Source of the DNA: Lytechinus pictus
Lineage: Eukaryota
Length of the DNA: 64,000 nucleotides
Assembly: GCF_037042905.1 (NCBI RefSeq)
Contig: NC_087250.1
Location: 23,808,001-23,872,000 of the forward strand
Reading direction: 5' to 3'
This document shows, in pieces, positions 1-30,300 of this stretch. Each line of letters begins with the position of its first letter. Positions within the stretch are counted from its first letter, which is position 1. The notes beneath the pieces are model-generated. The model did no database searches. It had not been told where the DNA came from and saw nothing but the letters and a program-made list of their open reading frames with translations. The position numbers were made by a program, and so were the translations under genes.

Positions 1-1823
1 AACAATCAAGGAATTACTGCTGAGAGTGACGAAGAAAAGGTAGAATTGTTCAACGCCTTCTTCAGCAGTGTCTTTACAGAAGAAGATTTAGAGCAAGTCC
101 CATTGCTAGATCACAGACACAGAGGGAACATGTTGTCTGACGTAGAAGTAAGGCCAAGCATGGTAAAGAACAAACTCAAAATGCTGAAGACCTGTAAGGC
201 AGCAGGACCTGATGGGTTTCACCCAAAAGTTCTGAGAGAAACAGCAGAAACGCTATGTGTACCCCTTACACTCATCTTCAGGAAGTCACTGAAAGAGGGT
301 GTCCTCCCACAGGCATGGAAAGATGCCAACATAACACCCATTCACAAAAAAGGTAGCCGCAGTGCTGTAGAGAACTACAGACCAATCAGTCTAACTTCAG
401 TCATTTGCAAGATTTTGGAATCAATCATACGAGATGCTGTTGTTAAGCACCTTGTTGAGAATGATGTCCTGCATGACTCCCAGCATGGATTTCTACCAAG
501 TAGATCATGTGTCACACAGCTGTTAGAAGTCATGGAGCTCTGGACGTCAACTCTTGATGAAGGATACAAAGTGGATGCAATCTATCTTGACTTCAGTAAA
601 GCTTTTGACTCCGTGCCTCACCAGCGGCTCATGAATAAACTTGAGTCATATGGTATTACAGGTTGTATCAAGAATTGGCTACATAGTTTCCTTTTAAGAC
701 GCAGACAAAGAGTTGCCCTTAATGGAAAAGTTTCTCGGTGGCTGCCTGTCCAAAGTGGAATTCCGCAGGGAAGTGTTCTCGGCCCCACCTTGTTTGTGAT
801 CTTTATCAATGACCTGCCTGAAGTTGTTGACAGCATTGTCAAGATTTATGCAGATGACACAAAACTATTTCGTGAAATCAAGCAAAGGAGTGACTGTGAC
901 CGACTTCAGGATGATCTAGATAAGCTGGTGGAGTGGTCAGAGAAATGGCAACTAAACTTCAATGCATCTAAGTGTAAGTCTCTACACATAGGAAAGCAGA
1001 GCGTACACTTTCAGTACAAGATTGATGACACTGTGCTTGAAAATGTCGGCGAAGAGAGAGACTTAGGAGTTATCATTGACTCTGACTTGAAGTTCCACTC
1101 CCATGTTGCAAGTGCCGTACTGAAAGCCAACCGTGTACTTGCTCTGATCAGGCGTACTTTCATTTATAGAGATAAATATACCATTGTTAAATTGTACAAA
1201 GCATTGGTGAGACCTATTCTTGAGTATGGAAATGCTATTTGGCACCCAAGGTATGTCTGTGACCTTAAAGCCATTGAAAAAGTTCAGCGACGTGCGACCA
1301 AGTTGGTGCCATCATTGAAAGATCAAGACTACAGTAGAAGGCTTCGTTCCTTGAAGTTACCTTCCATTCAGTACAGAATGCGAAGAGGGGATATGATACA
1401 TTACATACGTACAAGATCATCAATGGCATTGATGATTTGAACAAGGAGATGTTCTTTACATCTGCATCAACTCAGACAACACGTGGACATCTATGCAAAT
1501 TGTATGTGAAGAGAAGCAGACTGGATGTTAGAAAAAATACTTTCAGTGCCAGAGTTGTAAATGACTGGAACTCCTTGCCGGCAGAGATAGTTAGTAGTTA
1601 CTGCATCAACGTTGAACAGATTCAAGTCACAGTTAGACAAGTTTTGGTCTGCAGTGCAATATACTCACCCTTGGGAATAGTAACTCTGGCACAGCACACA
1701 GGCACACATTATTTTAATAGTTAGATGGAGATAGCAACAGTGATAGACCTGGAAACACGACTGCATAAGTAATTGCATTTTTCCAGTGGCAGTAGATCCG
1801 GTAATAAAGGTAATAAAGGTAAT
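1..1823 (+). mobile_element. CR1-like non-LTR retrotransposon (LINE), ORF2 reverse-transcriptase region through 3' end; runs off the window's left edge; frameshift near 1400-1440
   Basis: ORF 46-1440 has RT motifs KAAGPDG, NYRPISLTS, QHGF, LDFSKAFDSV, GIPQGSVLGP and YADD. The C-terminal TRGH...FSARVVNDWNSLP continues in another frame (1437-1724). A short (GGTAATAAA)n tail follows at about 1800-1823. Confidence 0.92.
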
Positions 1824-5546: not shown

Positions 5547-7288
5547 GACCAGATTATACAATACAGGAGGTAGACTCCATTAAGTCTCAAAGTTGATTTC
5601 CTATCAAACTAGAATAACACCTAAGTTCCCAATAAAAAAAATAAAGTAGAATACCATCGGTGGACTCATGTACATCAGACATAACAATCTATACATAGCA
5701 GCATTGTTAACTTTTTGACACTGAAATTACCATTTTTATCTTTTAATAAAATATATACTTTGAAAGTTTGAATACATGTTATGTTTGACAGGGGTACGCT
5801 GGGATAGATAATTATATCTAAATAGAATAAAATTCACTGAGCAAAATGCTGAAACCTCCTTCAAAATCAGATAACAAATAACTAAGTTATTGAATTTTAA
5901 AGGTTATAAAGTTTTTAAACAGTTATGTCATCATGAATATTCATTAGGTGGGCTGATGATGATGTCACATATCCACTTTCCTTTTCTTATGTTATTTCTA
6001 GCCTTTATGATATTACAAAAGGGAAGTGACTATTGAATCTTTCTTAAGTTTTGATTCTTTGTCATTGTTTCAATTCCAACTTAATAACCGGTCGATTCCA
6101 GAACTTTGGTGGTCCTACAACATTACTGTGAGAGCACAGTCCCCCATCAGTGTTTTATTCTAGTAACTATGTGCATCTTAATGAGAACATACAGGTGTTT
6201 TGACAATAGCTACTACCAAGGCATATCTGATTATATACAAAGGGGCAGCTTTCCTGGTTTTGGTTTTGTTGGCTGATGCCCTGTACATGGTAGAAAATGC
6301 TTTTCAATCAACATGCATTAGATTTGAAGCAGATAATTTCTGACATATTTTGATCTGCATACCTCCGCACGCACATAATGACCTCAATAACATTGAGAGA
6401 TAAACGCTCTCTGCACGATATGAGCCATGTATCTCTGGAATATTAAGAGGAAAATTAGAAAAATGGGATTATAAATAAAAGACAATCAATCACAATATTG
6501 CCTCTATCTTAAAATATGCATACATTTTCCGAAGCAAAACACATGGAACTAAGATTTCCAAAGGTAAGCCAGAACTGCACATCAATTTTCTAGGATTTAA
6601 GTGATTTATCATCTTCTGCGCATACAGTTTATGCAATATCAATGTCTATTCACGAACTGCTTCTTTCAGCTCATAGCCGAATTGACGCCGGAACACGGTA
6701 GGATGAGAAATATGAAGAGAATGTAATTCAGAGCACAATGATGGTCACATGTTAGTGAATTCATTAACTATTCAATGGGTGTCCATCTCTCAATAGGTCC
6801 ATAGTTTGACCCAATGACAATGAGCTGCGCGACGCATTGAAACCTACACCAGCTTGTTCTGCTTGTATGACCCTCTTCAACAGAGAAGGGGGTGTTGGAG
6901 TTTGAGGGGGGGGGGGGGCGGGTATAAACCTGTAATCCTCCTAGATCTGCCACCATTAACAGGGCCCTCCCATCTTCTCCAAAATGACAGACACCAAGTT
7001 AAAGAAGTCCTTTATACCAGATTACGCAGCAGCATAACATGTGTCATTTAACCCCTTCTCCAGTGAAATTCTTCATTGTCAAATCAGTTTTGTGGTTCAA
7101 CAAGATTTTCCGAACCCTGCTACACAATGAAAGAATCAACATTCATCACTAGAACTGTTACTTTCTTAATAGAATATTTCAGACTAGATTATTAATCGGC
7201 AGAAGATGTGTCCCCTTCTGCAGTGAAATTCCAGTTTTGCAGTCCCAGAACTTTTTGTCTAAACCATGCCAGCACAGTAACAGATTCA

Positions 7289-10200
7289 TCAATCATTACT
7301 AGAACTGCTACTCTTCCGGTCTTTAATCATTTGTCGGTTGTTGAATGGTAATTGTGCTGGACCACCCTGAAAAACTTCCACACAATCGTCTCGTCGCATC
7401 CGCTTCAGGGCATCCTCAAGATCCTGAGGGCTACAGATCTTCTTCCGTTGCTCTGCAAGATTAATCAGATTCCCTGTAGGGTCTGTTAGATCTTCCAGAC
7501 TATCAATGACTTCCTCCATTCCTAAGGCAACGGCAAGACCTCTCCAATCGTCCAATGTTATGCGACGACCGTTCAACCGTTGACTGAGCTCCTGCCGGGT
7601 GATCACGGAGGGTTCCTGTGGCACGCCATGGCTGCCCGATGTAATGTTCACAGATTCAATATTGTAAACATTTCCATAAACTGACATACAGGAAATTTGC
7701 TGGCTGAGCTGCCTCACTTCTGAACCCACCGGTGTTGTAGGTTGTGAGCCTGGTTCAGTACTCATAAGGATTCTGGGGGATTCATCCATCGGCTGGGTGG
7801 AGTTGGTACCTGGGGTATAGAAATAAAATGGCTTTGAGTTACTTCTCATTTTGGGGTGAAGCAACATTTCTCATATAGCAATTGCTCCTACACTAAATTG
7901 TCTGAAGATTGAACTAATGTTATGTTGTTGTTGGATCTAATGCTCTTTTATTTTCAACCTGTCTTAAATGAAGACAACGCAATGCAGGATGTACAGTTTA
8001 TATATACATTATTTATTGAAGATGATTATAACTTGATGATGACAAATACATGAGTAAGTCTGATGGTGACTATACTCTGAAGTATACAAAATAGACTCTG
8101 CAAACTGATGTAATATAAATTGTAAACTCTTCTGTAGCTGTCTAAACCATTCTCAAGTCTATTCTCTATTCTGATTTGGGTTCAGAAGCGAACCCCTTTT
8201 ATATTTGTCTGGTCAAGACTCTCTACAGCCAAAAAGGTGTTGGTCAACCATAAACGCTTGACCAAAACAATCTGTACATCATAACTTTACTCTGAATTGG
8301 GGTAGTTGACCTTTTCGGGAGAACATGAAATGTAGTGAATAAGAAAACCATAAAATGTGTGTGCATCAGAAGTTTAGCTGGAAGAAGAATGAGTAATACT
8401 TTCTTAAGTAAGTTGGAATTGGTATACTTCCTGTAGAAGTATTGATTAAGTATTGATATATTATTGAATATGTGAGATATGCACAGGGGGCATGTGCCCC
8501 CCATTTTGAGAAGCAAAATAAAAAATTTGTAATGTAAAAATGCCATTAAATGAGAGGTGTGCCCCCTCTTTAGAAATTGAATACCTTTTTTTTTGCTTGT
8601 CAAAAATTTTCTCCTAAAAATTTGCCCCCCTTTTGGAAAATCCTGGATCCGCCCCTGTGCACAATGACAAGAGTTTGAAAGAAAAGACTAACCAACATCA
8701 GATGATGATTCTCCTTTCTTCCCCGCTTGACCCCTAATGGCTTTCCTCAAGCGCTCTTCGAGGTTACTATCATCGATATGTGCATTATTTAGAACCCGCA
8801 AGTGACGCGGAAGGTGTGTTTCGTCGCAGCATCGGATTACTATCACCCGGCCCTTCCAATTACCCCCATCCACCCTTGGATGTAAAGCCATGTGTGTCGT
8901 CATAGTCTGGTAAAGATCATCCGTATCACAATCCTCCTTTGTGATGATGAGGACTACGTGAGAGCAGGCCTCCAGAGCATCCTCGATGCTTATCATCTTT
9001 GGAACTCCAAGTACGGCATCCGCAGCGGTCACCAAAGTCCAGTTGTTTCTACTGATGATGTCTTTGACCTTACAAACGTGATTCGTCTCTTGGCTGAATT
9101 CAAGATAGATGTTACGTTCTGGCTCTCCTTGATCTGTCAAAGATCTATTTGTTCCAGAGTCCATGGAACCTTCAAAGAAAAGATGGAAAATAAAGAAATT
9201 CGTAAATATCAGTTATCTGATACTGAAAACAAGGTATAACCTGAAACTTCCAATCATGTTTTCTCTGTGTTTTACAATTTTCTTCTTAAAAATTCATTCT
9301 GATTAAATCAGGTAGTTGACTGGGTTTCAGTAGATCAATGTTGACAAGCTACATATTATTTCAAAGCTGAGACTCGGCTCCTTCAAACAATATCAAAATG
9401 TTAATTTCATGATAACTCTTTTTTTTCATTTCATTATTATCATTGTATTGTTTATTTGACCAATATAAAAAAGTACAAATACATACACCAGAAAAAAAAG
9501 AGTATACAAACATGCAAAGAAATATGGGAGCGGGAAGTGAGTCAGGGGTAGGCCAAGTCAGGGGGCACAAAAGTGAAATTTAACACTGTTGCCCGGAGGC
9601 ATGTGCCCAACACATGCCAGCCCGTATACATCAATAAATAAATTTACACAAAATATTGCACAATGAAAAATGGGAATGCAAAGAAAGGGGGGGGGGGGGC
9701 AAACAAAAAAATCAAAGAAGATAGAGATGTATTGGGAATACATGCGCATTTTTATCATTAGAGCCATTTCAGCAGGAGTAAATGAGAGAAGGCCATACTC
9801 ACCGAGGCTAGAAAATGATGAATCTCCAGAACCATCCACAGAGGTTGTAGCTTCCTGACTATTTGATACAGCCAGGTCTCGCTGTTGTTGACTTTCTCTG
9901 CATCTCTGATACTCTCTTATTTCTTCCTGTTGCTGTTTTTCAGCTTTAATTTAAGGCATGAATGAAAGAAGAATAACCAAGGGGACATTTTGACCTGTAA
10001 GTACGAGCCAACCTACAGACTGTACATTCTTCTACTACTAGAATCTTTATAAGAAAAGGGTCTGTGGCATGAATCAAAGACATGGGGTGGGGCTGAATTA
10101 ATGCACAAAATCAGACTTTGATGGTAATTTTAACAATTTCTGTACAATGTTCACTGAAACAGAGGATGCGCTGTAGCCCCCAAGGCACCCCCAGGGGCCG

Positions 10201-13200
10201 TGGAAGCGGGGGGCGGGCTTCAGCTCCCCACTTTTTTCCAATACTGTGTACAAAAGCATAAAAATAACCATATGATTGTGATTTTTTGCATGGTCAGCCC
10301 CCCCCCCCCCACTTTGAAAACCGTTCCGTGGCCCCTGCCCCCTTGAATTACATATGAGATTTAGAAAGTGGATGACTTACTTTTTATACAGGCCTGTGCC
10401 TTATTATACCAATAATAAAACAACAGTTTTGAAATGGAATCTAAAAAAAATTTCCCTTTCTCTCCCCCCCTCCCCATTTTGGATGCATACCTGGGCCCCG
10501 TCTTACAAAGAGTTAAGATTGATCCAATCAATGTGACTCTATGGAAATCCATCAGTGTCATGATTTTTTATACAGGAAATGTGCAAAATGTCCTTTGTAA
10601 ACTAAGGAGAACACACCAAATTATCAAGAAATCAATGAATTTAAATATACATATCTAGATTTTTTTTTTAACAGACATGGATTCTATATGTTGACTTTGA
10701 GCATTGGCTTTCCATAGTTGCGATTGATCAGATCAATCGCAACTCTTTGTAAGATGGGCTCCAGCACTTTTGTTTTTTTGTATATATTCTAATTTTGTGG
10801 AAATAAATGAAATGAAATTAATCTACTGGCACAGACCCTTAGTATTAATATCTAATGTAAAGTATGGAGATTAGATTCACTCTTGTACTGAACGGAAATT
10901 ATTCCTTTCTTTATCAAATCCTCCCTAAAGTTTCCGGGTGGGTGTTCCATAAAGCTCTTTGTAAAGTTACGCACAACTTAACGCACGATTGGAACATGTT
11001 CTTAGGTCATAAATCAATTACATATGGATAACACATAGCACAAGAAAGGATCACCAGTCGTGCATAAAGTCATTCATATCTTACGAACAGCTTCATGAAA
11101 CACCCATATTTAAGTGAGGGCCCTGGATTTATCAAGATATTCCCACTTGACTATAAATTAAAGTAATAAAAAAAATCACCTTTGGATTATTAGAAAAAAA
11201 AACAAGCAAACAGATTAAAAAAAAAAAATTGAATCATAATTCTGATGGCGAAATATGACTGGTTGCCAGATAAGACCCCCCCCCCATGTGGCTGCTCGCA
11301 ATACAAACAGAAGGTTTGATGGAGGTGACACGACATTAGCTCTTGCAACATTTGCTCTGGTCTTGATATCTCAGAGGTTAGGCTACTGGGTTAGAGTTAG
11401 GATTGTAATAGAGTTTTTTGTTCAGAATCATGTAAATATATTGATTAGGGTTTGGAGGTTGTTTTTTGGCTGCAGATTTTCCATCAGAGCAATTGTCGCC
11501 GGAGCAAATGTCAACTCATGGAACCCTGATGAAGTCTAGTCTCAAGACCCAAGACATGGTATACCTGTAAATCGTTAAATTTGAGTTTGCAATTGCAAAC
11601 TAACCTCTGACTAGTATTGTGTCTCTGATCATGAGAAGCTTGGCTCTTGTCATTGCATCACGCATCCTGCTCATCTGGTGTTCAGCTTGAACTGTTGCCC
11701 TCCAGGAAGTCAGCAAGTCAACCGTCCCTTTGGTTGTCACAGATCCAGTCAACCGATTGGTGGTGTTGCATTTGTTGATTTGAGCTCTGGTACAACCCAA
11801 GGCATTGGCTAAACGCTCCATCTGGTCATCGGTTTCCAGATTGTCGGCTATCTCTCGTAGGACGGTGCCCGATATCATCCCAGTGATAGGTCTGGAAGGA
11901 GTCAAGAAAAGAAAATGACCAAATAATATCAGCTTAACTTGCTTTAAAGGTAAGTCCACCCCAACAAAATGTTCATTTTATAAAGAAAATTTTATAAAAA
12001 GCATGAAGGTTTCATCAATGTCAGATGTTAAAGTTAAAAAATTCTTTAAAATAAGTTTTGCTTATTTTTCACAAAAAAATTTAGCCTATATGACATACTG
12101 GTCAGTATGCAAATGAGGGGACCAATGACATCACCCACTCACTATTTCTCTTGTAGTTTATGTGTAATATGAAATAATTTGATTTTCTCCTCATTGTCAT
12201 GTGATGCAAAGTTTTTCGCGCTCTGAATGGAAACATCAATAACACTTTGTGGATCAAACAAGAGGTTCTTCATTGTCAAATCTGTAAAAATGGAATTCAA
12301 ACAATAACAGACAAAAGAAAGGGTGAGTGACATCAGTGACTCTCTCATTTGCATGTCACTGAATTGTGCATATAGGCCTGACTGTTTTGTGACAAAAGCC
12401 ATAACTTTCTTATTTTACATCCTGATTTTGATAAAAATTTTCAGCATTAAATTTGTTTGATTTTTCTCTCTTAATTCAAATCTGGGTGGAATTGAATGCT
12501 AATTGTAGAGCTATATCTTTTTCCCCTCTGGTATAACTACACTATAGCCATGAGACCTGACCTATTCCTAGTGAAAGGGACATGGAATGGCCAAAAAAAA
12601 AATGAATGGGAAAAGTGTAGAGGACTAAGTTGTGGCATTCTGCTAAACAAAAATTGAATGACTTTGCATCAATCCTAATCTTTACCCAATGAGGGTCTAC
12701 TTTTTCTTTCTCAATGAACCCCAGTCAAATTGTAATCAACTTACTCTGGAATGTCACCAGGAGACTGTTTTAAAGATGACTGACTTGACTGTGCTGCTGG
12801 AATAAAGAAAGACAAAATTGTCATACATGCATGCATGAAACCAAAGTAATAATTATGATTATAATCCACTACATTTGTAAGGTACATGTTAAATACAAAT
12901 GTTTCTACGTGCAAAGTTGAATTAGAACACTTCCATAGCCAAATTATTTAATACACTAAATAATCATCTTTATTAACATTAATATGAAAATATTGATAAC
13001 ATAATATTGTGGACAATAAATACCTTAGTTATTCCTCATATTTGTACAGCAAATTTGGCATTATGCCCACAAAATCATTGATTTAGTGGGCGAAATCTCC
13101 TTATTTTGGGGGGTGAAAACCTCTTCTTATTGGGGGGCATGTAAAATGTTTCCTCGGGAAAATGTGCCCCGTTCGGAAAATCCTGGATCCGCCCCTGCAA

Positions 13201-15785
13201 TCAGTAGAGGCGCACGGCCAATATGGGAGACTCTCTCCAATAGGGGAGACAATCTCCCACATTGGAGACTAGCTTTGCAAAAGGACAAAAGAAACACCAA
13301 CAAAAACATGATTTTTTCCACCCAAAATGTTGTCTCACTTAGGTCAGAAGCCCATTTGTTTTGTGTGTGATTGACAACAAAAATCCTTATCAAAACAGAA
13401 GTAGACGGTGAATTTTTAAAGGGCCCAGCCACTGACAAATCATGGGGAAATTGAATCGATACGAAATTTGCAAAAGGCCAATTGACTTGCATAATATAAT
13501 CCGTCCGTCATGAGCGCCCGTCGGACTAATGCGATAAAAGTTTGGACAGCACGAATTTGACCGAACTCGTGATGGTTATTTACTTCGGATCGTCGCAGTT
13601 CCAGTTTCCAACAATCCCAATTTCTAGACTCATAACAGGTCTCTTGATTGCTAAACAAAAATAAATAACCTCTGTGAAGTTACATGTTTCAAAGTAAAAA
13701 CATGCAGTTTACTTCTGGTTGGTTAGTCTACTAAAACTAATGCTCTCCTAAAAACCTCCCAGACATGCCAGCGTCTATTACATAACACCCCCAGGCATGC
13801 AGCCGAGTCAAAGACTTGAATCCAGTCAGACCACAGGTCCCTATGCTAATGAGCAAATAGGCCAGATTCATCCAAAATTCCAAATCATCTCGTGGCTGAA
13901 TCCTCCTCCTGGCAAAATCTCGTGATTTGTGAGAAAGAATTTACCTGTTTTAACCTCTAGTTAAATGAAATATCATTGCACCATCAGATAGAGTAAATGT
14001 TATTCTTTCATATTGGTCATTTATTTTTTATACAACATTTTGATAAATAAGTAAATTTCTGGCCTGAAAATGTGCCTCAAAACTGAATTTTCTTCCTCTG
14101 TTTTCATTTGCAAATTGTGCAAATTTTTTATTTTGAGCCTTAATGATATATACATCACCATAAAGCTGAAGTTCTGTACTTTCTCACAATGCCATTCTTG
14201 ATATTCGGCACCTTTTAATCGGGTCAAGATCACACTTTTTCCACCAAGGTACAAGACGAGATTTCTGAAATTTTGTACTTGCATGAAATCCATGGGCCGA
14301 TTGCACGAAAGGGTCTTTCCAAGGACCGTCTTTCGTGTCGCCCATCTTTTATGATGCGCTATAAGCGGGGTGTTTCTGAAATTTATGATAAACAAATAAA
14401 ATTTGTAAGCTTGCTTTTAAATCAAATTTTATACGATTTCATGAGATATCACATCATTTTATAAACAAATATTTTGTTTATTTTAATGGACAAATAAAAT
14501 ATATTTCCAGATAATTTATTTGAAATGCGTTTCACATGGCGTATCATAAAAGATGGGCGACACGAAAGACGGTCCTTGGAAAGACCCTTTCGTGCAATCG
14601 GCCCCAGAGTTCTGATTGGCTGGATAAGGTTCACAGAACAACAGGCGCGGGTAATTTGAGGAGATTATACCACATGGGAAGTGTGACCTTCCCATGAACC
14701 CAGGCACTTGAACCGTTGGAATTTGCCATTGTGTGGTCTCTTTGACCAATCAGAGTGCAGTATTCTTGTTTTCAAGCTGCTTTATGTACTTGGACAATGA
14801 AAAAAGTGTGATCTTGACCCGATTAAACCAATTCTTATTTTCCCCATGATTTGTCAATGAAAGGTCGCTTTAAAGTAGACGGTGAATGACAAGGGGTAAC
14901 TTTTCATGAGGAATCTGCTTATCACATTTTTATTTGCCGCCAAGGTAATCCTTTTGCAGCAAATGTAAACAAACAAAATTGATCTCCAAACTGGAGACTG
15001 TCTCTGAAATTGGATACCCAAATTCTTTACAAAAGTCTCTGATAAAAATATGGAGATAATCTCCCACATTGGAGACAGTCTCCAATATTGGCCGTGCGCC
15101 TCTACTGGCAGTATGATTAAGTATGATTTGGACTCAATTTGGAGCCTTGATTCTGCCCGGCATCATTACATGGTCATGATCATTTCATTTCAAATTTCAG
15201 AAAGCATACACACGAAGGCAGTTTGAAAAAAAATAACTTTTCCATTTCAGAGCTGAAAAATATGAAAACTGACAGACTAAGCTGTCCATAGTCTACATAG
15301 AAATCTATTGGAGAGAGAAACACATATAAATTATCATACTAAAATTTAGTTCTAACGTTAGACCTCTTAATCTACTTTTGCCAAACGACCGCAATCATGA
15401 TGACATGCAGCGACAACTGTTTTCTCTTTTTTGATAATTCTTGTCTACCGGACCATGCTGAAAAAACAGTGAATCAATTATCAAGTTCAACATCAGGCCT
15501 TCACTTACCGGTATGCAATGAAGATGTATTGATTCTTAGTGAGGATAAAATTGCCTCAAGTGTGCTCCGCTTCGGCTCTGCCTCAGACAAATCCCTCCAT
15601 TCCCTCAAAATTTCAATAGTGCTTCTGAGGTAATCATTGTTCTTTTCAAGAAGTATTCTTTCCAAATTTCCAAGACTTTGTCCGAGTTTGAGTCCTAGAT
15701 CCTGATATAGATGATCAGAAACTTTCGAAGAACACACTTTCCTTGCTATCTCAAACAGTTCTTTATCAGTTATATGTGTATCCAT
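7289..15785 (-). CDS. Multi-death-domain TIR protein, DD-DD-TIR-(RHIM-like)-DD, 584 aa; exons 15785-15509, 12796-12745, 11891-11605, 9943-9803, 9169-8693, 7809-7289
   Basis: All introns are GT-AG with polypyrimidine tracts, and phases (1,2,1,1,1) give one open frame of 1755 nt from a good start context (AAACATGG). Exon 1 is DD-like (ITDKELFEIARKV...LYQDLGL...EILREWRD...LEAILSSL). Exon 3 is DD-like (GTVLREIADNL...LANALGC...DLLTSWR). Exon 5 is TIR (IYLEFS...DAVLG...IEDALEACSHVVLIIT...VIVI...LPRHLRVL). Exon 6 is a MyD88-type DD (ELSQRLN...DDWRGLAVALG...DPTGNLI...RRDDCV). Confidence 0.8.
10493..10763. mobile_element. Roughly 270-bp MITE family with GGGCCCCGTCTTACAAAGAGTT termini; further copies near 21665-21880, 31495-31770, 47262-47515, 49695-49950, 50940-51200 and 54540-54770
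   Basis: Near-identical internal sequence (CTCTATGGAAATCCATCAG...AAAGGAGAACACACCAAATT) and inverted ends (AACTCTTTGTAAGATGGG) recur about 7 times. Confidence 0.8.
10939..11105. mobile_element. Small MITE family (GGGTGTTTCATAAAGCTGTT...AACAGCTTTATGAAACACCC); copies near 31195-31365 and 50300-50465
   Basis: Inverted termini and a shared core (AAGGATCACCAGTCG) in three places. Confidence 0.7.
13202..15107. mobile_element. 1.9-kb non-autonomous TIR element in intron 1 of the minus DD-TIR gene, with a nested palindromic MITE (14294-14604); fragment at about 44695-44788
   Basis: TIRs CAGTAGAGGCGCACGGCCAATAT / ATATTGGCCGTGCGCCTCTACTG. The nested element has TIRs of about 55 bp starting GGGCCGATTGCACGAAAGGGTCTTTCCAAGGACCG. 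Confidence 0.8.
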
Positions 15786-15889: not shown

Positions 15890-16281
15890 CACCGAGCAGC
15901 TAGCCCGGCCCCCAAGCGCGCCCCGCCCGTTCCCCGCCCCCGGCCCAGCTCGCACTCCATCTCCGGCCAGCTAGCTAGCGTCGCGTCGCGTCGAGCTGAG
16001 AGTTTTGAGCAGATCGATCCATCCAGTATCCAGCGCGCGAAAGATTTCTGGGGATTCCCCCGATTCCTAGTGTTATGTACGCATGCGCAGACTATACCAA
16101 AGCCGAGCTAGCGAGGCGCCTAGCCTGCCTGCCTGCCATTTCTACAGCTCGTAGTTGAACTCCCGCTTTTTAGTACTATACTAAGCCTCGGCCTACTAAA
16201 TTATTTGAAAACCACGTCAGAATCCGACTGAAGCAAGCCACGACTGAAGCCTGAAGGAAGGCAGACTCAATATTTCAGAGA
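15890..16281. promoter_or_regulatory. Putative bidirectional GC-rich promoter of the DD-TIR pair: GC boxes, NF-kB site (16050-16060), NRF1-like site (16079-16089) and probable non-coding exon 1 of the plus gene ending at 16281
   Basis: CpG-rich island in an AT-rich background, with CCCCGCCC twice, GGGGATTCCCC and ACGCATGCGCA. A plus-strand donor GA|GTGAGT is at 16282. The minus gene's ATG is at 15785. Confidence 0.6.
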
Positions 16282-21353: not shown

Positions 21354-24300
21354 ATGACCTCTGAGGCACGGTCCCAGGTCCTCCGGAACGACCGGCTCAT
21401 GTACCAACTGGCAGAGACCATAGATGCCGTCAAGTACTACTTCCCCTTAGGTCGTGACCTTCTTGGCTCCCAGGCGGCCGTCTCCAACATCATCGGACGA
21501 ACAGAACCAGATTACCAGGAGATTGTCTTCAAATGTTTGTATACATGGAGGAATGCGAATGGGAAAGGAAAGGGAGAGAGACTGGTGGAGATATTCAAAG
21601 GTGTTGAGTTAGATAAAGTTGCAGCTTACTTAGAGCATGGTAAGAAAGGTTTATTCATTATGAGTCCAGTGGCTTGTCTTACAAAGAGTTACGATCGATC
21701 CGATCAACCTCGACTGTATGGAAATCCATTGACGTCACCAGTTTTTTCTTAGAAAAATTTGCGCAATGCCCTTTGTAAGCAAAGAGAAGCATTCTGAATT
21801 TTCAAGAAATCATTGAATGTATGAAATTACACCATATCTAATAAAACATTTCAAGCAAATGTGGATCGTAGGTGTTGATGTTGCTGGCTTTCCATAGTTA
21901 TGGTTGATTGGATCAATTGCAACTTTTTGTAAGATGGAACCCAAGGTTGTATTTTATATATCTCTTTGACAGGTGACCCTTTCTTGGGAGTTAATTCGGT
22001 TCCCTGACAATGAAAAATCTGTATGTTAAGCCAAGCATAAAACCCAACCTCCAAAACTTAACCGTAATCATCTTTACATTGTTCTGAACCAAAAACTCTA
22101 TTACAATCCCACCTCTAACCCTATGCCCTCTGAGATTTTAAGTCAGGAGCAAATGTCGCAGGAGCATGCATCATATCACCATTAAATCAGCCCTATTGAT
22201 AATTTGGGGGGGGGGGGTGAAGACAACTTCCAAGCATATGAAAATGACCCCTTGCACTGAGCTGAATTGTAATATTGTCAATAATTTTCAATCCTAGTAT
22301 AGAGCATATCATGTGATCTAACATGCACTCCCAAAGGGAATTGCCTATCAATATTATCCCAGCTATGGCTCAGAAAGCTTTGTGCAGTGCACAATCATTT
22401 CAAGGAATAAATTCCCGCCAGGTTCCTGTTTCCCTTGCCTGGGGGGGTGTTTCACAGAGATTTAAGTATGACTTGGAGGCGTGCTTAAATTCTGATACGT
22501 ACGTGATATGAAACGTGCAATCCTCTTTGCATGATCTTACCAATGAGGACTTACATTTTTTAGTACATGCAACTAGGCATTTATTAAAAGTGCGACTCCG
22601 TCATACTTAAATCTTTGTGAAACACCCCCCTGGGTTGAGTGCAGCACAGTGTGGATAAATTTTTTGCTGAAGACAATGACGTGGCTGGGATTTAAATTCT
22701 CATTGAATATCCAGGCCATTTGAATCACATTTTGTAATTTTAAAAATTGATCAAAATTAATTTGTGGAACACATTCAATCATGAAACCAATTGAATATAT
22801 TAGAATGAAAAACAATGAAATTATTTATGAGAAATTTACAAGAGAATGAATAATAGAAATTCAAGTTTGACATTTGTTTGTAAACTATGTTGCTGAAAAT
22901 GCTATCTGCCGAGTTTTGCAAAAGATTTGACATCAAAACACCAAGTTCAGGGAGATAATGACAAATTTGGAAATTATACATTCATCCCATCTTGTTTGCG
23001 AAAATCCATACATGTATACCAACACCCCTAATTTCACATGGATCTGTCATTTCGCAGTGCAATTTGACCTCCTCCCCAAAAAGCCAGTCAAAATATTGTT
23101 AATCTATTTTTTAAGTGATTTCCTTATTTTATCCTTCCATTATTTCCACTGAGTTTTGCAAAAGCTTTGCCATCAAAATACCAATTTCAGGGGAATGATA
23201 ACAAAATCAGAAACACATTCATGAGATTCATCCCATTTTGCACGATTTAATTGATCACAATGTTGTCTTATTCCTCAGTCCATTTCCCCTACTGCAGCCA
23301 TATGGCGAGTTGTACCAGCTACATATAGGTGGTTTGAATGAAAATGAATGAAACTGCCGTTTTCAATTCGGGAAATGTGACTGAGGCATCATCCTCTCTC
23401 ATTTTATCCTCCAGCACTTGCAAGAAACCCAAACTGCCTTGGTGAGGATAGATTCCTACAGAGTTTGGCATCAAAGATAGACTGTGCGTCAGTCTACAGG
23501 AAACTGGGCCTTCCTCTCTTGGACAACAACTCTGCAAGATTGTCAAACCTCATCGGTCCTCTGAATATTCAATTTACCCAGTACAAAGAAGCACTCTTTC
23601 AAGTAAGATTACACTGTCGTCATTGCTGTTGATATCATTATTGTGTGAATTGCCAATTTGTCTACTGCCAGCTCGTCCACTCACCAAACAGTCTACTTTC
23701 ATTTAGTCTTATAATGCTCTTCAATCCATCAACATTTCGTCTAACATCCATTTGGTCCAATCATCACTTCGTCTAATCACAATTTCGTCTATGACCATTT
23801 CGTCTCATAACCAGTTGGTCTAATATGCATTTCATTTTCATTCATTTGACAAAACTGACACTGTGCAATTAGACCAAATGGTATATGGACTAAATGGTAT
23901 TTGACCAACTGGTTAATAGACGAAATGGCAATTAGATCATGTGGATAGTGGATGAACTGATGGTAGTAGACCAGTTGGCAATTGGACGAATTGGAATGAA
24001 CTGTTGTCGTGTCTAAAAGCTTGTGTCCTGTGCATTATTTGCTATAAAGTTCTTACCTAGCTGCCAATGAAATGGAAACTCTTAAAAGAATGGTTTCAGG
24101 GGAAGCATAAATTTCAAAACATAAAGCCAATCTTTAATGCTTTTAAGGAATATGTGAGAAAACAAAAATTGATTATCATGATAAAAACAAATGAAAACTT
24201 CTTCAGAAAACCATATTAGATTTATGTGTGTGCATGTTAACTGATTATTATGTTAAACTGTATTTCAGTAATTTCTCAGGCTCTCCCAGTCAATGTAATC

Positions 24301-27300: not shown

Positions 27301-30300
27301 GGGCCAGCGCAACCTAGCTGCAGGCGCGGGGGAACTTCAGCGGGCCGGCATAATGGCTTCGCGCCTATTGAGCTTGCCACTCTGACCAGCTGAGTCGATC
27401 ACGCGTCATGATGGGCACTCTCTGGAGCGAGAAATCACAAATTTAAGGGTCTCCGGAACAAGAAAAAATGGGAATTTCTATGGCTTTCTGAATTGGTGAT
27501 GCTCTGGAATGGAAATTTTGGACGAAAATGGGGGTCTCAACCGCGGCACATACGTATAATAAATTTATACTGAGGACCCCCCTCCCCCCACAACATACAC
27601 TAACTTGATATGGCAAAGCTTGTAAACTCAAGTACTAGATGAAGTCAGAGAGAGTCTATAAGCATGCATATTTCAAAGGAGTGTTTTACTGATTTGCTAC
27701 AACTAAGATTGATCTGTTAATTTGTTGTCCCATTGAAACAGATATTTACAATCATTTGTAAATAGTAAGCTTATCTCTTTAGGTAAATTAGTTAGGCCTC
27801 TGGTCCATGTAACCATCATTATGTTCCTCTATCATTGAAAATAGTATACCCCACCCAGTGGTGGACCGAGACACGGAGGAGACAATGATTGGAGGGGCAC
27901 TGTATTGTTTGTGAACAATCGCTGTGCCCCTCCGGGTCACGGTCCGCCACTGTCCTCACTGCTATAACACAGAAACCTAATGTATTTCAGTTGGGGTATC
28001 GCAACCCTGATTTTCGTTTTCCTTGTTTACAGAGTGGTCAGCACCTCGCAGATTCCCATGAGAGATTATGGTATTAGATTGCAGCTGTTCTTTTTGTTTT
28101 CTGACGTAGTAGTGTAAACAAACTCTTACTGGGGCTCCGCTTTTAAAGGAAAGGAAAAGTAGGAAATAGATATTTTACTTGTTTAAGGGTAATTTTATAT
28201 TCAAAAGTTACTCATGATTTAGAGGAAGACCTAACTGAAAGTTTGAATGAAGCGAAATGATCCAAAAGTGGCGATATAAACAATATTAACTAAAACTGGA
28301 CCGCTGACTTGCAATGTGCTCTCTAGCTCCCTCAATTGTGGTTATCTCTCTCTCTCTTTCCCGGTGAAGGTTGCTTCTCCAGGGGAGCATTTCATCAATA
28401 TTTTCATCCGACAAGTTGTCAGATCTGACATCTTTCCATGATTTTGATTGGCTGAGAGGCACTGTTCCTATGGTAACTGTCGGATAAAATGGGACTTGTC
28501 AGATAAAACATCCGACAAGTCCTTTCATGAAACGCCCCCCAGGAGTAGGATTGCATTGCACAGTGTGTGTTTACGTTAGGTTTAGGTGTCCAGTAGTGGT
28601 GGATGCCAAAAATGGGTTTCAGCATTAAAGGATAGGTTGTCGTCGTGCACAATGGTCAGCAACTTATCACTAATTTGTAAGAACAATTCTGATTGGTCCC
28701 TGGTCAGTCTTCTGAGCAAAATGCGCATGCAACAATGATCTTGATAGGCTATTTCAGTAGTGATTACCTCTGTGCTACTTCAACATGATCTGTATTTCTT
28801 CTTTTTATTTTGATGAACTTTAGGCCCCATGGAATTAACTGAAAATGACTGCAAAGAGGAAAGCACTCCTAGCTTTATAGATGAGAAGATGGAGACCGAC
28901 GGTCCTTCAGCGAACAGCGCCCTCTCTCAAGAACAATTCTATGACATTTATCTCTATGCATCGTCAAAGGACACGCAGTATTTTCTAGCCATGGAACAGC
29001 TCATACATAGAATAGGATGGAAGATGACTTCGTGTTTTGATCTTGAACTGGGTGAACCGGTGATGGGAAGCATAGAAAAGGCTCTACTGAAATGTTCTCA
29101 CGTCGTGTGTTTGATTACGAGAGATGATTGCAATCAGGTCAACGTCGAACGAACGATGACGATCGAGATGACCTTTCAGTCGCTCGAGGATAAAGGATTG
29201 TCCAGAAGTCTTATTCCGATATACTGTGGTGTGCCGAAATCTGCCCTACCGCTATCGCTAAGAGCGCTGAGAGGAGCCAGTATTGACGACCATGACCTTG
29301 AAAAGTTATTGAGGAATAGTATTGATGAGAGCATCCGTAAAAAGAGGGAAGAGGAATTTCGCAACATTTCAGGTGAGCTGGACAAAGGCTAGTAACATAC
29401 ATTACACGATAGGAATAGGACACAATTTTTTAAACACATTTTGCACTGAATAAAGGAGGTTCAAACGAGTATTCACTTGAAGTTAAGCATATTGCGGGGA
29501 ATACTAAAATCAGAATTCTGCTTTTCCACATGCCACAAACCTTTGTGGTCAGAGTAAAGTCAAAATTGGCTTCTTGTCATAGCCAGTGTTGACGTCTCTA
29601 CTATTTGGATTCAAATTTGCTTTTCTACAGGAAGGCTCAAAGTAGACTGGAATTTTTATTGTAGTATTTATACCACTATTTTGATTTTATAGGTTGGAAT
29701 TTTCATATTAAATGCAATCACAATCGGATCCAAATTGATTGTTTAGTGTGTGCAAGGCTTTACATTGTAAGGAAAAATTACACACATACATGTAAGGAAT
29801 TCAGACTCATTTTAATACAGTAATTAACTTCTCAGCTCTCCAGCATATGTACCAACTATGAGTGTCCTGATATTTTTAGATATTTTTCTTAGAAAATATT
29901 GATGCAAAACCTCTAAATCCCAGTCAATAGAATTATTTTCCAATCTTTTTATCTTGGAAATAGGCCAGGGTATTTTGGGAGATCATAAGGGGGGGGGGGG
30001 GGCTCCCAGGCCTGACTTGAGATTGGAGGTTGTCTGAGACATAATCTACAAAATTGTATTGTAATTTATTTCATGAAAATTGCTATTAATTATGCTAATT
30101 TATGTGTAATCAGTATGCAAAATCATACTTTGTCCTCTTACTCCCTATAAGATAAAGTTCAAAATGTTCTAATTTTGGGGGCAGGCACTCTTTGTGGTGT
30201 TCCTAGTAAGTATGAAAAAATTGTGATATCAGATCAATTTCTAATGTACTATATTGTTCTTTGCAATTTCTTATATATTTCCTTTTTTACCTTTTGTTTT

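What the first reader, a model, noticed from the sequence alone, without database searches (positions are those of the whole stretch)
7289..9169. Reversed MyD88-like order: a MyD88-type death domain C-terminal to the TIR, in a three-DD protein
The last exon encodes TRQELSQRLNGRRITLDDWRGLAVALGMEEVIDSLEDLTDPTGNLINLAE...LKRMRRDDCV. This shares hallmarks with the MyD88 DD as I recall it (RRRLSLFLN...ADWTALA...DPTGRLL...GRDDV). Here it follows the TIR, while two differently typed DDs precede it. Inference: the protein could engage IRAK-type DDs at one end and FADD/RIP-type DDs at the other, or act as a MyD88 decoy.
Basis: partly seen in the sequence, partly recalled or inferred. Interest (0 to 1): 0.75.

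Follow-up and report, generated by a model that had tools for sequence, protein, structure and literature searches.

The report
Sea urchin three-death-domain TIR adaptor gene
This is the 3' half of an expressed, sea-urchin-specific gene for a protein with two death domains, a divergent TIR-fold domain and a third, C-terminal death domain; that last domain is not MyD88-type but belongs to an urchin family otherwise attached to ZU5, ankyrin and Roc-COR proteins.

Summary
The sequence observation holds. The window is Lytechinus pictus, and the stretch is the last two coding exons of LOC129263084, annotated only as "uncharacterized protein" (584 or 583 aa).

- **Splicing:** RNA contigs from two studies and stranded raw reads join the TIR-like exon (9169-8693) to the terminal exon (7809-7289) at GT..AG, both in phase 1. 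They also join exons 2 to 5.
- **Architecture:** DD1 (FADD/RIPK1-like), DD2 (an urchin-expanded type), a Q/E-rich linker, a divergent TIR fold, a linker, then DD3.
- **Conservation:** full-length orthologues appear only in L. variegatus and S. purpuratus.

The "MyD88-type" label does not hold.
- DD3 is 36% identical to the human MyD88 death domain. Its family profile nevertheless scores UNC5B (39.7 bits) above MyD88 (33.4).
- The genuine L. pictus MyD88 death domain scores 57 bits to human MyD88 but only 22 bits on the DD3 profile.
- An AU test rejects a DD3+MyD88 clade (p = 0.013).
- DD3's closest relatives sit behind ZU5, ankyrin-ZU5 or Roc-COR modules.

Best reading: a fast-evolving, probably non-enzymatic multi-death-domain adaptor built by exon shuffling. 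This is a new domain arrangement of known parts, and its function is untested.

The parts
15509..15785 (-). Exon 1, coding part (ATG at 15785): DD1, a FADD/RIPK1/CRADD-like death domain (aa 1-92). The donor GTAAGT follows 15509, phase 1.
   Evidence: Sequence read and ORF. There is no Pfam hit, but a profile of the orthologues plus two paralogues hits FADD, RIPK1, CRADD and ankyrin death domains at E 2e-5 to 1e-3. The junction to exon 2 is not directly observed; it is inferred from phase, from contig X15 record 8 extending 495 nt beyond exon 3, and from the RefSeq models.
12745..12796 (-). Exon 2: a 52-nt linker exon. A NAGNAG acceptor (12796 or 12793) accounts for isoforms X1 and X2 (584 and 583 aa).
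   Evidence: Joint 11891|12745 in 2 contigs plus 11 and 5 raw reads. Sequence. The one-residue difference between the isoforms is seen.
11605..11891 (-). Exon 3: DD2, a death domain of a large single-exon family expanded in this urchin.
   Evidence: Pfam Death E 8.6e-5, 23.0 bits against a cut-off of 22.6. At least 44 paralogous hits in the L. pictus genome, many on the same chromosome. The family profile hits the Fas death domain only weakly (E 0.03). Joints on both sides are seen.
9803..9943 (-). Exon 4: a 141-nt Q/E-rich linker exon, phase 1-1, not noted in the finding.
   Evidence: Joints 9943|11605 and 9167|9801 (equivalent to 9169|9803) in 2 contigs plus 8-17 raw reads per run. Sequence.
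8693..9169 (-). Exon 5: a divergent TIR-fold domain encoded by one phase 1-1 exon.
   Evidence: - Pfam TIR_2 reaches only E 0.022, 15.7 bits against a cut-off of 28.
- 6 of 9 family members hit TIR_2, the best at E 3.2e-7.
- AlphaFold2 model: pLDDT 74, alternating strands and helices.
- VIA-align top matches are all TIR domains (Hydra TRR-2, Z 11.8, rmsd 2.7 A over 118 residues); MyD88 TIR scores Z 10.1 and SEFIR domains Z 9.6-10.3.
- Foldseek top hits in Swiss-Prot are MyD88 TIR domains at E 2.4e-4.
- The L. pictus genome holds 8 such exons.
7289..7809 (-). Exon 6, coding part (stop at 7291-7289): S/T/P-rich linker, conserved GNVYN-type motif, DD3 and a Ser-rich tail.
   Evidence: Joint to exon 5; ORF. 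In S. purpuratus the whole exon-sized module is shared with a Roc-COR protein (75% identity over 229 aa, starting at the exon boundary).
7358..7603 (-). DD3 core (aa 481-562): a six-helix death domain of the UNC5/p75NTR/MyD88-like branch. It is an echinoid family otherwise found C-terminal to ZU5, ankyrin-ZU5 or Roc-COR modules.
   Evidence: Pfam Death E 1.2e-7. AlphaFold2 predicts six helices. Profile against PDB: UNC5B, then MyD88, then p75NTR. Fold searches. Relatives' architectures. Tree and AU test.
7634..7687 (-). Conserved beta-prone motif (VYGNVYNIESVNITSG) about 10 residues upstream of DD3.
   Evidence: Related motifs precede the death domain in relatives that have different N-termini (P0003, P0005, P0007, P0009; L012). 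No canonical RHIM core tetrad is visible by eye. Function unknown.
7000..7288 (-). 3' UTR. It continues roughly 250 nt beyond position 7000, judged from contig length.
   Evidence: Continuous stranded RNA coverage and contigs X1 record 1 and X15 record 6.

Best explanation
The stretch is the 3' end of L. pictus LOC129263084. This gene is transcribed, spliced and restricted to echinoids.

It encodes a 584-aa cytosolic protein with no signal peptide or transmembrane segment evident. The order of parts is:
- DD1 (FADD/RIPK1-like)
- DD2 (urchin-expanded type)
- a Q/E-rich linker
- a divergent TIR-fold domain
- a linker carrying a conserved beta-prone motif
- DD3

DD3 is not a MyD88-type death domain. 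It belongs to an echinoid death-domain family within the broad UNC5/p75NTR/MyD88-like branch. Its other members terminate ZU5, ankyrin-ZU5 and Roc-COR proteins.

Each domain lies on its own exon. The TIR-like exon and the Q/E linker exon are symmetric, phase 1 on both sides, and the terminal DD3 exon is entered in phase 1. The terminal 'linker + motif + DD3' exon occurs nearly unchanged behind a Roc-COR gene in S. purpuratus. The TIR-then-death-domain order therefore most likely arose by exon shuffling, not by inversion of a MyD88 gene.

Inferred mechanism (not shown): the TIR fold docks onto TIR-bearing receptors or adaptors. Urchins have hundreds of TLRs. The three non-equivalent death domains then nucleate or bridge different death-domain oligomers, so the protein acts as a non-enzymatic hub or scaffold in innate-immune or cell-death signalling. 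The position that aligns by eye with the catalytic Glu of NADase TIRs is His, Tyr or Gly in the three orthologues, which argues against an enzymatic TIR.

The gene evolves fast, as many immune genes do.
For: **Gene model and expression**
- Searches give the spliced model; searches show it is identical to RefSeq X1.

**Orthologues and constraint**
- Full-length orthologues were found only in L. variegatus (88% identity) and S. purpuratus (48%).
- Between Lytechinus and Strongylocentrotus the domains are more conserved (50-65%) than the linkers (28-41%).

**Domain identities**
- DD3: Pfam Death and a six-helix model.
- DD1 profile hits FADD, RIPK1 and CRADD death domains.
- DD2: Pfam Death.
- TIR fold: Z up to 11.8 against TIR domains, and the family hits TIR_2 down to E 3e-7.

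**DD3 is not MyD88-type**
- Profile against PDB: UNC5B 39.7 bits, MyD88 33.4, p75NTR 31.7.
- Foldseek ranks UNC5, p100/p105, NRADD and p75NTR first.
- L. pictus has a canonical MyD88 elsewhere. Its death domain scores 57 bits to human MyD88, and a TIR exon with FDAYICF and RDLLPG motifs lies about 2 kb downstream.
- That death domain scores only 21.8 bits on the DD3 profile.
- The tree separates MyD88 (100/97) from the DD3 family (87/95). The AU test rejects a joint clade, p 0.013 to 0.015.

**Shuffling**
- DD3-family members carry ZU5, ankyrin+ZU5 or Roc+COR modules.
- The S. purpuratus Roc-COR protein shares the entire terminal-exon module.
- Another L. pictus TIR-like paralogue (L007) is followed about 0.5 kb downstream on the same strand by an ORF with a death-domain-like sequence of a different type; it aligns with DD1. 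Splicing of the two was not checked.

**Rapid evolution**
- dN/dS is 0.68 for the whole gene against L. variegatus. DD3 shows 12 nonsynonymous changes to 1 synonymous.
- 15 of the 19 listed allelic differences in the coding sequence are nonsynonymous.
Against: - No functional data exist, and binding partners are unknown.
- The TIR assignment for this protein fails Pfam's threshold. It rests on family-level hits and a medium-confidence model (pLDDT 74).
- The tree has only 24 rows, long branches and few named reference death domains. The DD3 family's exact sister group is unresolved: its link to UNC5B itself is not recovered as a clade.
- By raw pairwise identity, human MyD88 is still the closest solved death domain to the L. 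pictus sequence.
- dN/dS near 0.7 could also mean relaxed constraint. The excess of nonsynonymous changes in DD3 is not significant on its own (my rough estimate is a binomial p of about 0.16).
- The catalytic-Glu argument rests on aligning motifs by eye, not on a structural superposition.
- The exon 1 to exon 2 junction was not directly observed. A DD1-less isoform is annotated in L. variegatus.
Confidence: 0.6

Rival explanations
1. Reversed MyD88. DD3 is a MyD88-type death domain that recruits IRAK4/Pelle-type death domains or competes with MyD88 as a decoy, while DD1 and DD2 engage FADD/RIP-type partners.
For: Human MyD88 is the best single-sequence PDB hit of DD3 (E 0.0019). DD3 is the second-best hit in the L. 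pictus genome to the human MyD88 death domain (37% identity, E 0.33). The TIR-like model's best Swiss-Prot structural hits are MyD88 TIR domains. The DD1 profile does hit FADD and RIPK1.
Against: The DD3 family profile prefers UNC5B. The species' own MyD88 death domain scores lowest but one on the DD3 profile. MyD88 forms a separate 100/97 clade, and the AU test rejects DD3+MyD88 (p 0.013). The nearest relatives are death domains attached to ZU5, ankyrin or Roc-COR modules. A canonical MyD88 exists elsewhere in the genome.
Confidence: 0.1
2. Negative regulator or sponge. A multi-death-domain protein with a degenerate TIR sequesters death-domain or TIR signalling components and damps signalling. 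Pathogen pressure or an arms race with paralogues drives its rapid evolution.
For: The TIR sequence is degenerate and sub-threshold. dN/dS is high and nonsynonymous polymorphism is abundant. TIR-only or death-domain-less adaptor variants act as inhibitors in other invertebrates, for example oyster MyD88s and amphioxus CIKS2 (PMC4346834; PMC11087794).
Against: Nothing here distinguishes activation from inhibition. All four domains are retained across about 50% sequence divergence, which fits either role.
Confidence: 0.15
3. Substitute adaptor for IL-17 receptor (SEFIR) signalling. Echinoderms are reported to lack CIKS/ACT1, whose ancestral form is Death + middle region + SEFIR. This death-domain + STIR-fold protein could fill that role.
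For: CIKS is reported absent from echinoderms, and its ancestral form has an N-terminal Death domain (PMC11087794). SEFIR domains are among the structural matches (9ot1_E at Foldseek rank 3, Z 10.3; IL-17RB SEFIR at Z 9.6). The family profile weakly hits a prokaryotic SEFIR (E 0.6).
Against: TIR domains outrank SEFIR in every search. No TRAF6-type PxExx[aromatic/acidic] motif is present in the three orthologues, and no U-box hit appears in the Pfam scans. The evidence is purely circumstantial.
Confidence: 0.05
4. Enzymatic TIR effector. The TIR-like domain is an NADase that triggers cell death once the death domains oligomerise it.
For: Structural matches include SARM1, plant TIR and bacterial TIR NADases. 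Paralogues keep a Glu in the xEMA motif.
Against: In the three orthologues of this gene that position is His, Tyr or Gly (the alignment to the catalytic Glu is my inference). Sequence similarity to catalytic TIRs is about 8-13%.
Confidence: 0.05

Closest known systems
MyD88 (Death - intermediate domain - TIR adaptor)
   Same: It combines death-fold and TIR-fold domains in one cytosolic protein. DD3 is 36-37% identical to the human MyD88 death domain. The TIR-like model's best Swiss-Prot structural hits are MyD88 TIR domains.
   Different: - The order is DD-DD-TIR-DD.
- DD3 lies outside the MyD88 clade.
- The TIR lacks recognisable box 1 and box 2 sequences and fails Pfam's cut-off.
- L. pictus has a separate canonical MyD88 gene on another chromosome.
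Death domains of UNC5, ankyrin and DAPK type (ZU5-UPA-DD and Roc-COR-DD proteins)
   Same: This is the best profile and structure match of the DD3 family (UNC5B: 39.7 bits; Foldseek ranks 1-5). Direct DD3 relatives in S. purpuratus follow ZU5, ankyrin+ZU5 or Roc-COR modules.
   Different: This protein has no ZU5, UPA, ankyrin or Roc-COR part, and its death domain follows a TIR fold instead. UNC5B itself does not group with the DD3 family in the small tree.
Lineage-specific TIR adaptors with shuffled domains in amphioxus and molluscs
   Same: This is the same evolutionary theme: TIR and death-fold modules recombined into lineage-specific 'direct connection' proteins (PMC2575513; PMC4346834).
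   Different: [quoted passage not shown] This family would have escaped such surveys because its TIR is below Pfam thresholds. I found no report of a DD-DD-TIR-DD arrangement in the library searched.
Ancestral CIKS/ACT1 (Death - U-box/TRAF sites - SEFIR)
   Same: An N-terminal death domain combined with a STIR-superfamily fold. CIKS is reported missing from echinoderms (PMC11087794).
   Different: No U-box and no TRAF6 motif. The fold matches TIR slightly better than SEFIR. This protein has two additional death domains.

Membership tests
MyD88 | The death domain is orthologous to the MyD88 death domain | tested here: not met
   The L. pictus MyD88 death domain (L016) scores 57.4 bits to human MyD88, while DD3 scores 21.5 bits. 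MyD88 forms a 100/97 clade excluding DD3. AU test p 0.013.
MyD88 | A single N-terminal death domain followed by a C-terminal TIR | tested here: not met
   The spliced order is DD1-DD2-TIR-DD3.
MyD88 | A canonical TIR with box 1 (FDAF-type) and box 2 (RDxxPG) | tested here: not met
   Pfam TIR_2 scores 15.7 bits against a cut-off of 28. The box 1 position reads NIYLEF. The true L. pictus MyD88 has FDAYICF and RDLLPG.
MyD88 | Assembles with IRAK4-type death domains (Myddosome) | not testable with these tools
   The only complex job (DD3 with the L. pictus MyD88 death domain) gave no verdict.
Death domain (Pfam PF00531, death-fold superfamily) | Sequence match above the curated cut-off | tested here: met
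   DD3 scores 32.2 bits and DD2 scores 23.0 bits against a cut-off of 22.6. DD1 is recognised only at profile level (FADD, RIPK1 and CRADD at E about 2e-5).
Death domain (Pfam PF00531, death-fold superfamily) | Six-helix bundle | tested here: met
   The AlphaFold2 model of DD3 has six helices (pLDDT 74). Its top structural hits are all death domains. DD1 and DD2 were not modelled.
TIR / STIR superfamily | Sequence match above Pfam's cut-off | tested here: not met
   The subject scores E 0.02, 15.7 bits. Paralogues reach E 3.2e-7, and 6 of 9 family members match.
TIR / STIR superfamily | Flavodoxin-like TIR fold | tested here: met
   VIA-align Z 11.8 (rmsd 2.7 A over 118 residues) to the Hydra TRR-2 TIR, and nearly all of the top 50 entries are TIR or SEFIR domains. 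Foldseek E 2.4e-4 to 3e-4.
TIR NADases (SARM1, plant and bacterial TIRs) | Catalytic glutamate | tested here: inconclusive
   The aligned xEMA position is His, Tyr or Gly in the three orthologues and Glu in paralogues. Its equivalence to the catalytic Glu is judged by eye, not by superposition.
ZU5-UPA-DD proteins (UNC5, ankyrin, PIDD) | ZU5 and UPA domains upstream of the death domain | tested here: not met
   Pfam finds no ZU5 in P0001, P0031 or P0003. ZU5 is present in the DD3-family relatives P0007 and P0030.
CIKS/ACT1 | U-box and TRAF-binding sites plus a C-terminal SEFIR | tested here: not met
   No PxExx[FYWDE] motif and no U-box in the Pfam scans. TIR outranks SEFIR structurally.

The most novel reading that the evidence does not exclude
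An echinoid-specific hub adaptor was assembled by exon shuffling. A mobile 'beta-motif + death domain' terminal exon, also found on Roc-COR and ankyrin-ZU5 proteins, was grafted behind a cryptic TIR fold that already carried two other death-domain types. This would wire TIR-type (or even IL-17R/SEFIR-type) receptors directly to DAPK/ankyrin-type and FADD/RIPK-type death-domain networks. It might also compensate for the CIKS adaptor that echinoderms are reported to lack.
Probability: 0.15. Interest if true: 0.65.

Novelty: new variant of a known kind. Interest (0 to 1): 0.4.

Why it matters
Sea urchins have hundreds of TLRs and NLRs, but the literature describes their repertoire of TIR domain combinations as close to the human one. 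This gene and its roughly eight TIR-like paralogues show that a family of cryptic TIR-fold adaptors, some combined with death domains in non-MyD88 orders, escapes standard domain searches.

It is also a clean case of exon shuffling, with RNA support. Each domain has its own exon, the exons shuffled here are in phase 1, and the same terminal exon occurs on a Roc-COR gene in a sister lineage.

L. pictus is a genetically tractable urchin, so the function can be tested directly. However, the headline claim of a reversed MyD88 does not hold, and nothing yet ties the protein to a specific pathway.

Tried and rejected
- **Word-index homologue search with the 192-aa terminal ORF:** nothing, because of the tool's length window. 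Searches with the full protein and with its TIR region found only the three echinoid orthologues.
- **Single-sequence PDB search of the TIR-like exon:** no TIR hit. The family profile hit only a designed Rossmann protein and, weakly, a SEFIR.
- **hhalign of the DD1 profile against the DD3 profile:** no relationship.
- **Complex prediction of DD3 with the L. pictus MyD88 death domain:** verdict 'no answer' (score 0.00). This is not evidence either way.
- **Protein-atlas search on DD3:** only generic death-domain clusters and a p75NTR fragment cluster, all scoring below 0.9.
- **The look-up of encoding contigs for isoform X2 of L. variegatus:** not on record. Isoform X1 worked.
- **Rast et al. 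2006 (PMC3707132):** not held in the library. Hibino et al. 2006 was not searchable, so older descriptions of urchin 'orphan' TIR genes could not be checked.
- **Positive selection on DD3:** considered and not claimed. The counts are 12 nonsynonymous to 1 synonymous against L. variegatus and 6 to 0 among alleles, but they overlap and are small.
- **RHIM reading of the motif at 7634-7687:** considered and not adopted. I saw no I/V-Q-I/V-G core.
Full report
**What is in the window**

The finding lies on the minus strand of a eukaryotic gene. ORF listing and Pfam show a death domain in the ORF at 7289-7867 (PF00531, E 1.2e-7). They show a weak TIR_2 match in the ORF at 8688-9164 (E 0.022, below Pfam's cut-off). 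A further death domain lies at 11600-11959. Another ORF, at 15501-15785, starts with ATG in a CpG-rich, promoter-like region.

Reading the splice sites by eye gives the following:
- The TIR-like exon is 9169-8693, phase 1 at both ends.
- The terminal exon starts at 7809 in phase 1.
- The DD2 exon is 11891-11605, entering in phase 2 and leaving in phase 1.
- The DD1 exon ends at 15509 in phase 1, so a further exon was needed between DD1 and DD2.

**RNA evidence**

A run search found transcript-like Logan contigs holding about 0.55-0.58 of the sampled words, which is the exon plus UTR share of the query. It also found three 2026 stranded RNA-seq runs of the same species. I laid two contig sets and two raw-read runs on 7000-12999.

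That gave four GT..AG joints on the minus strand:
- 7809|8693
- 9169|9803
- 9943|11605
- 11891|12745

Each joint is seen in one contig from each of two studies and in 5-17 raw reads per run, and all reads lie on one strand.

It also reveals two small exons that the finding does not mention: a 141-nt Q/E-rich linker (9943-9803) and a 52-nt linker (12796-12745).

Joining the six exons gives a 1755-nt ORF of 584 codons. The exon 1 to exon 2 junction lay outside the 6-kb limit of the read tool. It is inferred from phase, from a contig that runs 495 nt beyond exon 3, and from the public gene model.

**Identity of the gene**

An exhaustive HMMER search with the terminal exon returned a 583-aa protein that is 100% identical to it. 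This is XP_063957316.1, "uncharacterized protein LOC129263084 isoform X2" of Lytechinus pictus. Isoform X1 (584 aa) equals my model. The two isoforms differ by a NAGNAG acceptor at exon 2.

Full-length relatives are only L. variegatus LOC121416994 (88% identity) and S. purpuratus LOC100891602 (625 aa, 48%). L. variegatus also has an annotated isoform that lacks DD1.

Between Lytechinus and Strongylocentrotus the four domains keep 50-65% identity and the linkers 28-41%. All four modules are therefore under some constraint.

**The TIR-like domain**

Alone, it fails Pfam (15.7 bits against 28) and finds no TIR in PDB by sequence. The L. pictus genome holds eight such single-exon domains. Six of nine aligned members hit TIR_2, the best at E 3.2e-7.

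An AlphaFold2 model built from that alignment has pLDDT 74 and pTM 0.71, with alternating strands and helices. Its structural matches are:
- Foldseek against PDB: TIR and SEFIR domains at about E 3e-4.
- Foldseek against Swiss-Prot: MyD88 TIR domains first, at E 2.4e-4.
- VIA-align: TIR domains at Z up to 11.8 (Hydra TRR-2, rmsd 2.7 A over 118 residues), with MyD88 TIR at Z 10.1 and SEFIR domains at Z 9.6-10.3.

I accept a divergent TIR fold. In the family alignment a conserved xEMA motif carries Glu in the paralogues but His, Tyr or Gly in the three orthologues of this gene. I take this to be the position of the NADase catalytic Glu. That equivalence is an inference from motif spacing, not a superposition.

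**DD1 and DD2**

DD1 has no Pfam hit. A profile of its orthologues plus two paralogous domains hits FADD, RIPK1, CRADD, ankyrin and PIDD death domains at E 2e-5 to 3e-3.

DD2 passes Pfam Death narrowly (23.0 bits). It belongs to a family of at least 44 single-exon paralogues, many on the same chromosome. Its profile only weakly resembles the Fas death domain.

**Is DD3 MyD88-type?**

Evidence in favour:
- Human MyD88 is the best single-sequence PDB hit (E 0.0019, 21.5 bits), although UNC5H2 follows at 19.0 bits.
- When the human MyD88 death domain (taken from that alignment) is searched against the L. pictus genome, DD3 is the second hit, at 37% identity and E 0.33. The first hit scores 51 bits.

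Evidence against:
1. The first hit (L016) is the real MyD88. It scores 57.4 bits to human MyD88, 22 bits clear of p75NTR. A canonical TIR exon with FDAYICF and RDLLPG motifs lies about 2 kb downstream.
2. A profile of the DD3 family (alignment A1) ranks UNC5H2/UNC5B (39.7 and 35.8 bits) above MyD88 (33.4) and p75NTR (31.7).
3. On that profile the L. pictus MyD88 death domain scores only 21.8 bits. That is below L. pictus L012 and L013 (64 and 60), annelid ZU5-linked death domains (45-52), UNC5B (39) and two L. pictus UNC5-like death domains that follow a possible UPA-like exon (about 38). L012 and L013 themselves best-match UNC5 among solved death domains.
4. The AlphaFold2 model of DD3 (six helices) is closest to UNC5H2, NF-kB p100/p105, NRADD and p75NTR. 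MyD88 comes at ranks 13-17.
5. In a maximum-likelihood tree of 24 death domains, human and L. pictus MyD88 form a 100/97 clade. The DD3 family, with L012 and L013, forms a separate 87/95 group. Forcing DD3 and MyD88 together costs 15-16 log-likelihood units, with p-AU 0.013 to 0.015.

DD3 therefore belongs to the broad UNC5/p75NTR/MyD88-like branch but not to MyD88. The tree is small and has long branches, so its exact sister group is open.

**Where DD3 came from**

DD3's closest relatives, all from S. purpuratus or unnamed ENA assemblies, are C-terminal death domains of three kinds of protein:
- a ZU5 protein (P0007)
- an ankyrin-repeat + ZU5 protein (P0030)
- a Roc + COR protein (P0018/P0002, which RefSeq names "netrin receptor UNC5B-like")

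The Roc-COR protein and the S. purpuratus orthologue of this gene share the whole terminal module: linker, GNV[YF]N motif, death domain and Ser-rich tail. Identity is 75% over 229 residues and much higher over the last 190. The shared stretch begins exactly where the terminal exon begins.

Three observations point to exon shuffling as the origin of the arrangement, not to rearrangement of a MyD88 gene:
- Each domain has its own exon. The TIR-like and Q/E linker exons are phase 1 at both ends, and the DD3 exon is entered in phase 1.
- The terminal module is shared with the Roc-COR gene, as described above.
- A second L. pictus TIR-like paralogue is followed on the same strand by an ORF resembling a different death-domain type (L007).

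L. pictus itself has no second close copy of the DD3 exon.

**Rate of evolution**

Against the L. variegatus gene (L034), Nei-Gojobori dN/dS is 0.68 overall. For the TIR-like domain it is 0.54. For DD3 the counts are 12 nonsynonymous changes to 1 synonymous. Intron identity is about 84%, against 92-94.5% in the exons.

Of the 19 best-supported differences between the RNA-seq animals and the reference within the coding sequence, 15 change the protein, including all 6 in the terminal exon. Several of these variants recur in an older L. pictus gene model, so they are alleles.

The gene is fast-evolving. The numbers are too small, and too overlapping, to claim positive selection.

**Function**

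Nothing here measures function. The most economical reading is a non-enzymatic adaptor or scaffold. The TIR fold would provide recruitment to TIR-bearing receptors or adaptors. Three non-equivalent death domains would nucleate or bridge different death-domain assemblies.

The alternatives are given as rivals with lower odds:
- a decoy or inhibitor
- a true reversed MyD88
- a substitute for the CIKS adaptor, which Chen et al. 2024 report as absent from echinoderms (PMC11087794)
- an NADase effector

No TRAF6-type motif is present. A complex prediction of DD3 with the L. pictus MyD88 death domain gave no verdict.

**Novelty**

The protein is already in RefSeq, but only as "uncharacterized", with Pfam Death as its sole precomputed domain. 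UniProt and RefSeq automatic names for relatives say "Netrin receptor UNC5", which agrees with my classification of DD3.

The literature I could search describes urchin TIR domain combinations as few and human-like (PMC2575513). I found no mention of a DD-DD-TIR-DD arrangement. Hibino et al. 2006 and Gerdol et al. 2017 could not be read, so prior description under another name is not excluded.

I rate it as a new variant of a known kind: known domains in a new, lineage-restricted arrangement. It is of moderate interest.

Noticed in passing
window 21354-21752 (+) and 28829-29392 (+): A divergently oriented paralogue of the gene studied. It has a death-domain-like exon (no Pfam hit, but it aligns with DD1) and a TIR-like exon (TIR_2 E 1e-4) that keeps the Glu of the xEMA motif. 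The two genes sit head-to-head around 15.9-16.3 kb. I saw no downstream death-domain exon up to 36 kb.
   Followed up: partly
window 16050-16060: The kappaB-like palindrome GGGGAATCCCC sits roughly 100 nt upstream of the likely 5' end of exon 1, in the CpG-rich region between the two divergent genes. Another first-stage note (s1-322137) flagged it. I confirmed only its presence.
   Followed up: partly
window 7634-7687 (-): The motif VYGNVYNIESVNITSG lies just upstream of DD3. Similar GNV[YF]-type beta-prone motifs precede the death domain in relatives with unrelated N-termini (ZU5 and Roc-COR proteins, and L. pictus L012). It therefore travels with the death domain as one module. No canonical RHIM tetrad was seen.
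   Followed up: partly
window 12793-12797 (-): A NAGNAG tandem acceptor (cag|cag) at exon 2 explains RefSeq isoforms X1 and X2, which differ by one Ala.
   Followed up: yes
window 10200-10800, 11000-11600, 12000-12400, 8400-8800: Intronic stretches with very high contig and read depth on both strands (up to about 36,000 summed contig depth), many loose ends and internal joints. These look like high-copy interspersed repeats transcribed elsewhere in the genome.
   Followed up: no
G000:C6, many loci (e.g. L023-L033): The DD2-type death domain is a single-exon family with at least 44 hits in L. pictus, heavily clustered on the window's own chromosome and sometimes in tandem 1.3 kb apart. What these exons are attached to was not examined. 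Urchin NLRs with N-terminal death domains are one possibility.
   Followed up: no
L016 / L036 (G000:C3:43013000-43017400): The canonical L. pictus MyD88 gene. Its first exon carries a long Ser-rich N-terminal extension before the death domain. A TIR exon with FDAYICF and RDLLPG motifs lies about 2.2 kb downstream.
   Followed up: partly
window 46-1440 (+), 40999-42310 (+): Long ORFs whose translated sequences look like reverse transcriptases of non-LTR retrotransposon (LINE) fragments. I did not scan them against any family library.
   Followed up: no
window 36060-37361 (-): A 433-aa single-exon ORF with many hydrophobic segments, probably a multi-pass membrane protein. Not identified.
   Followed up: no
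window 7289-7809 and P0015: Allelic variation in the terminal exon is entirely nonsynonymous in the listed set: I495V, V505D, N525E (two linked SNPs), R550Q and N583D. An older gene model also carries a 3-aa VIP insertion before DD3.
   Followed up: partly
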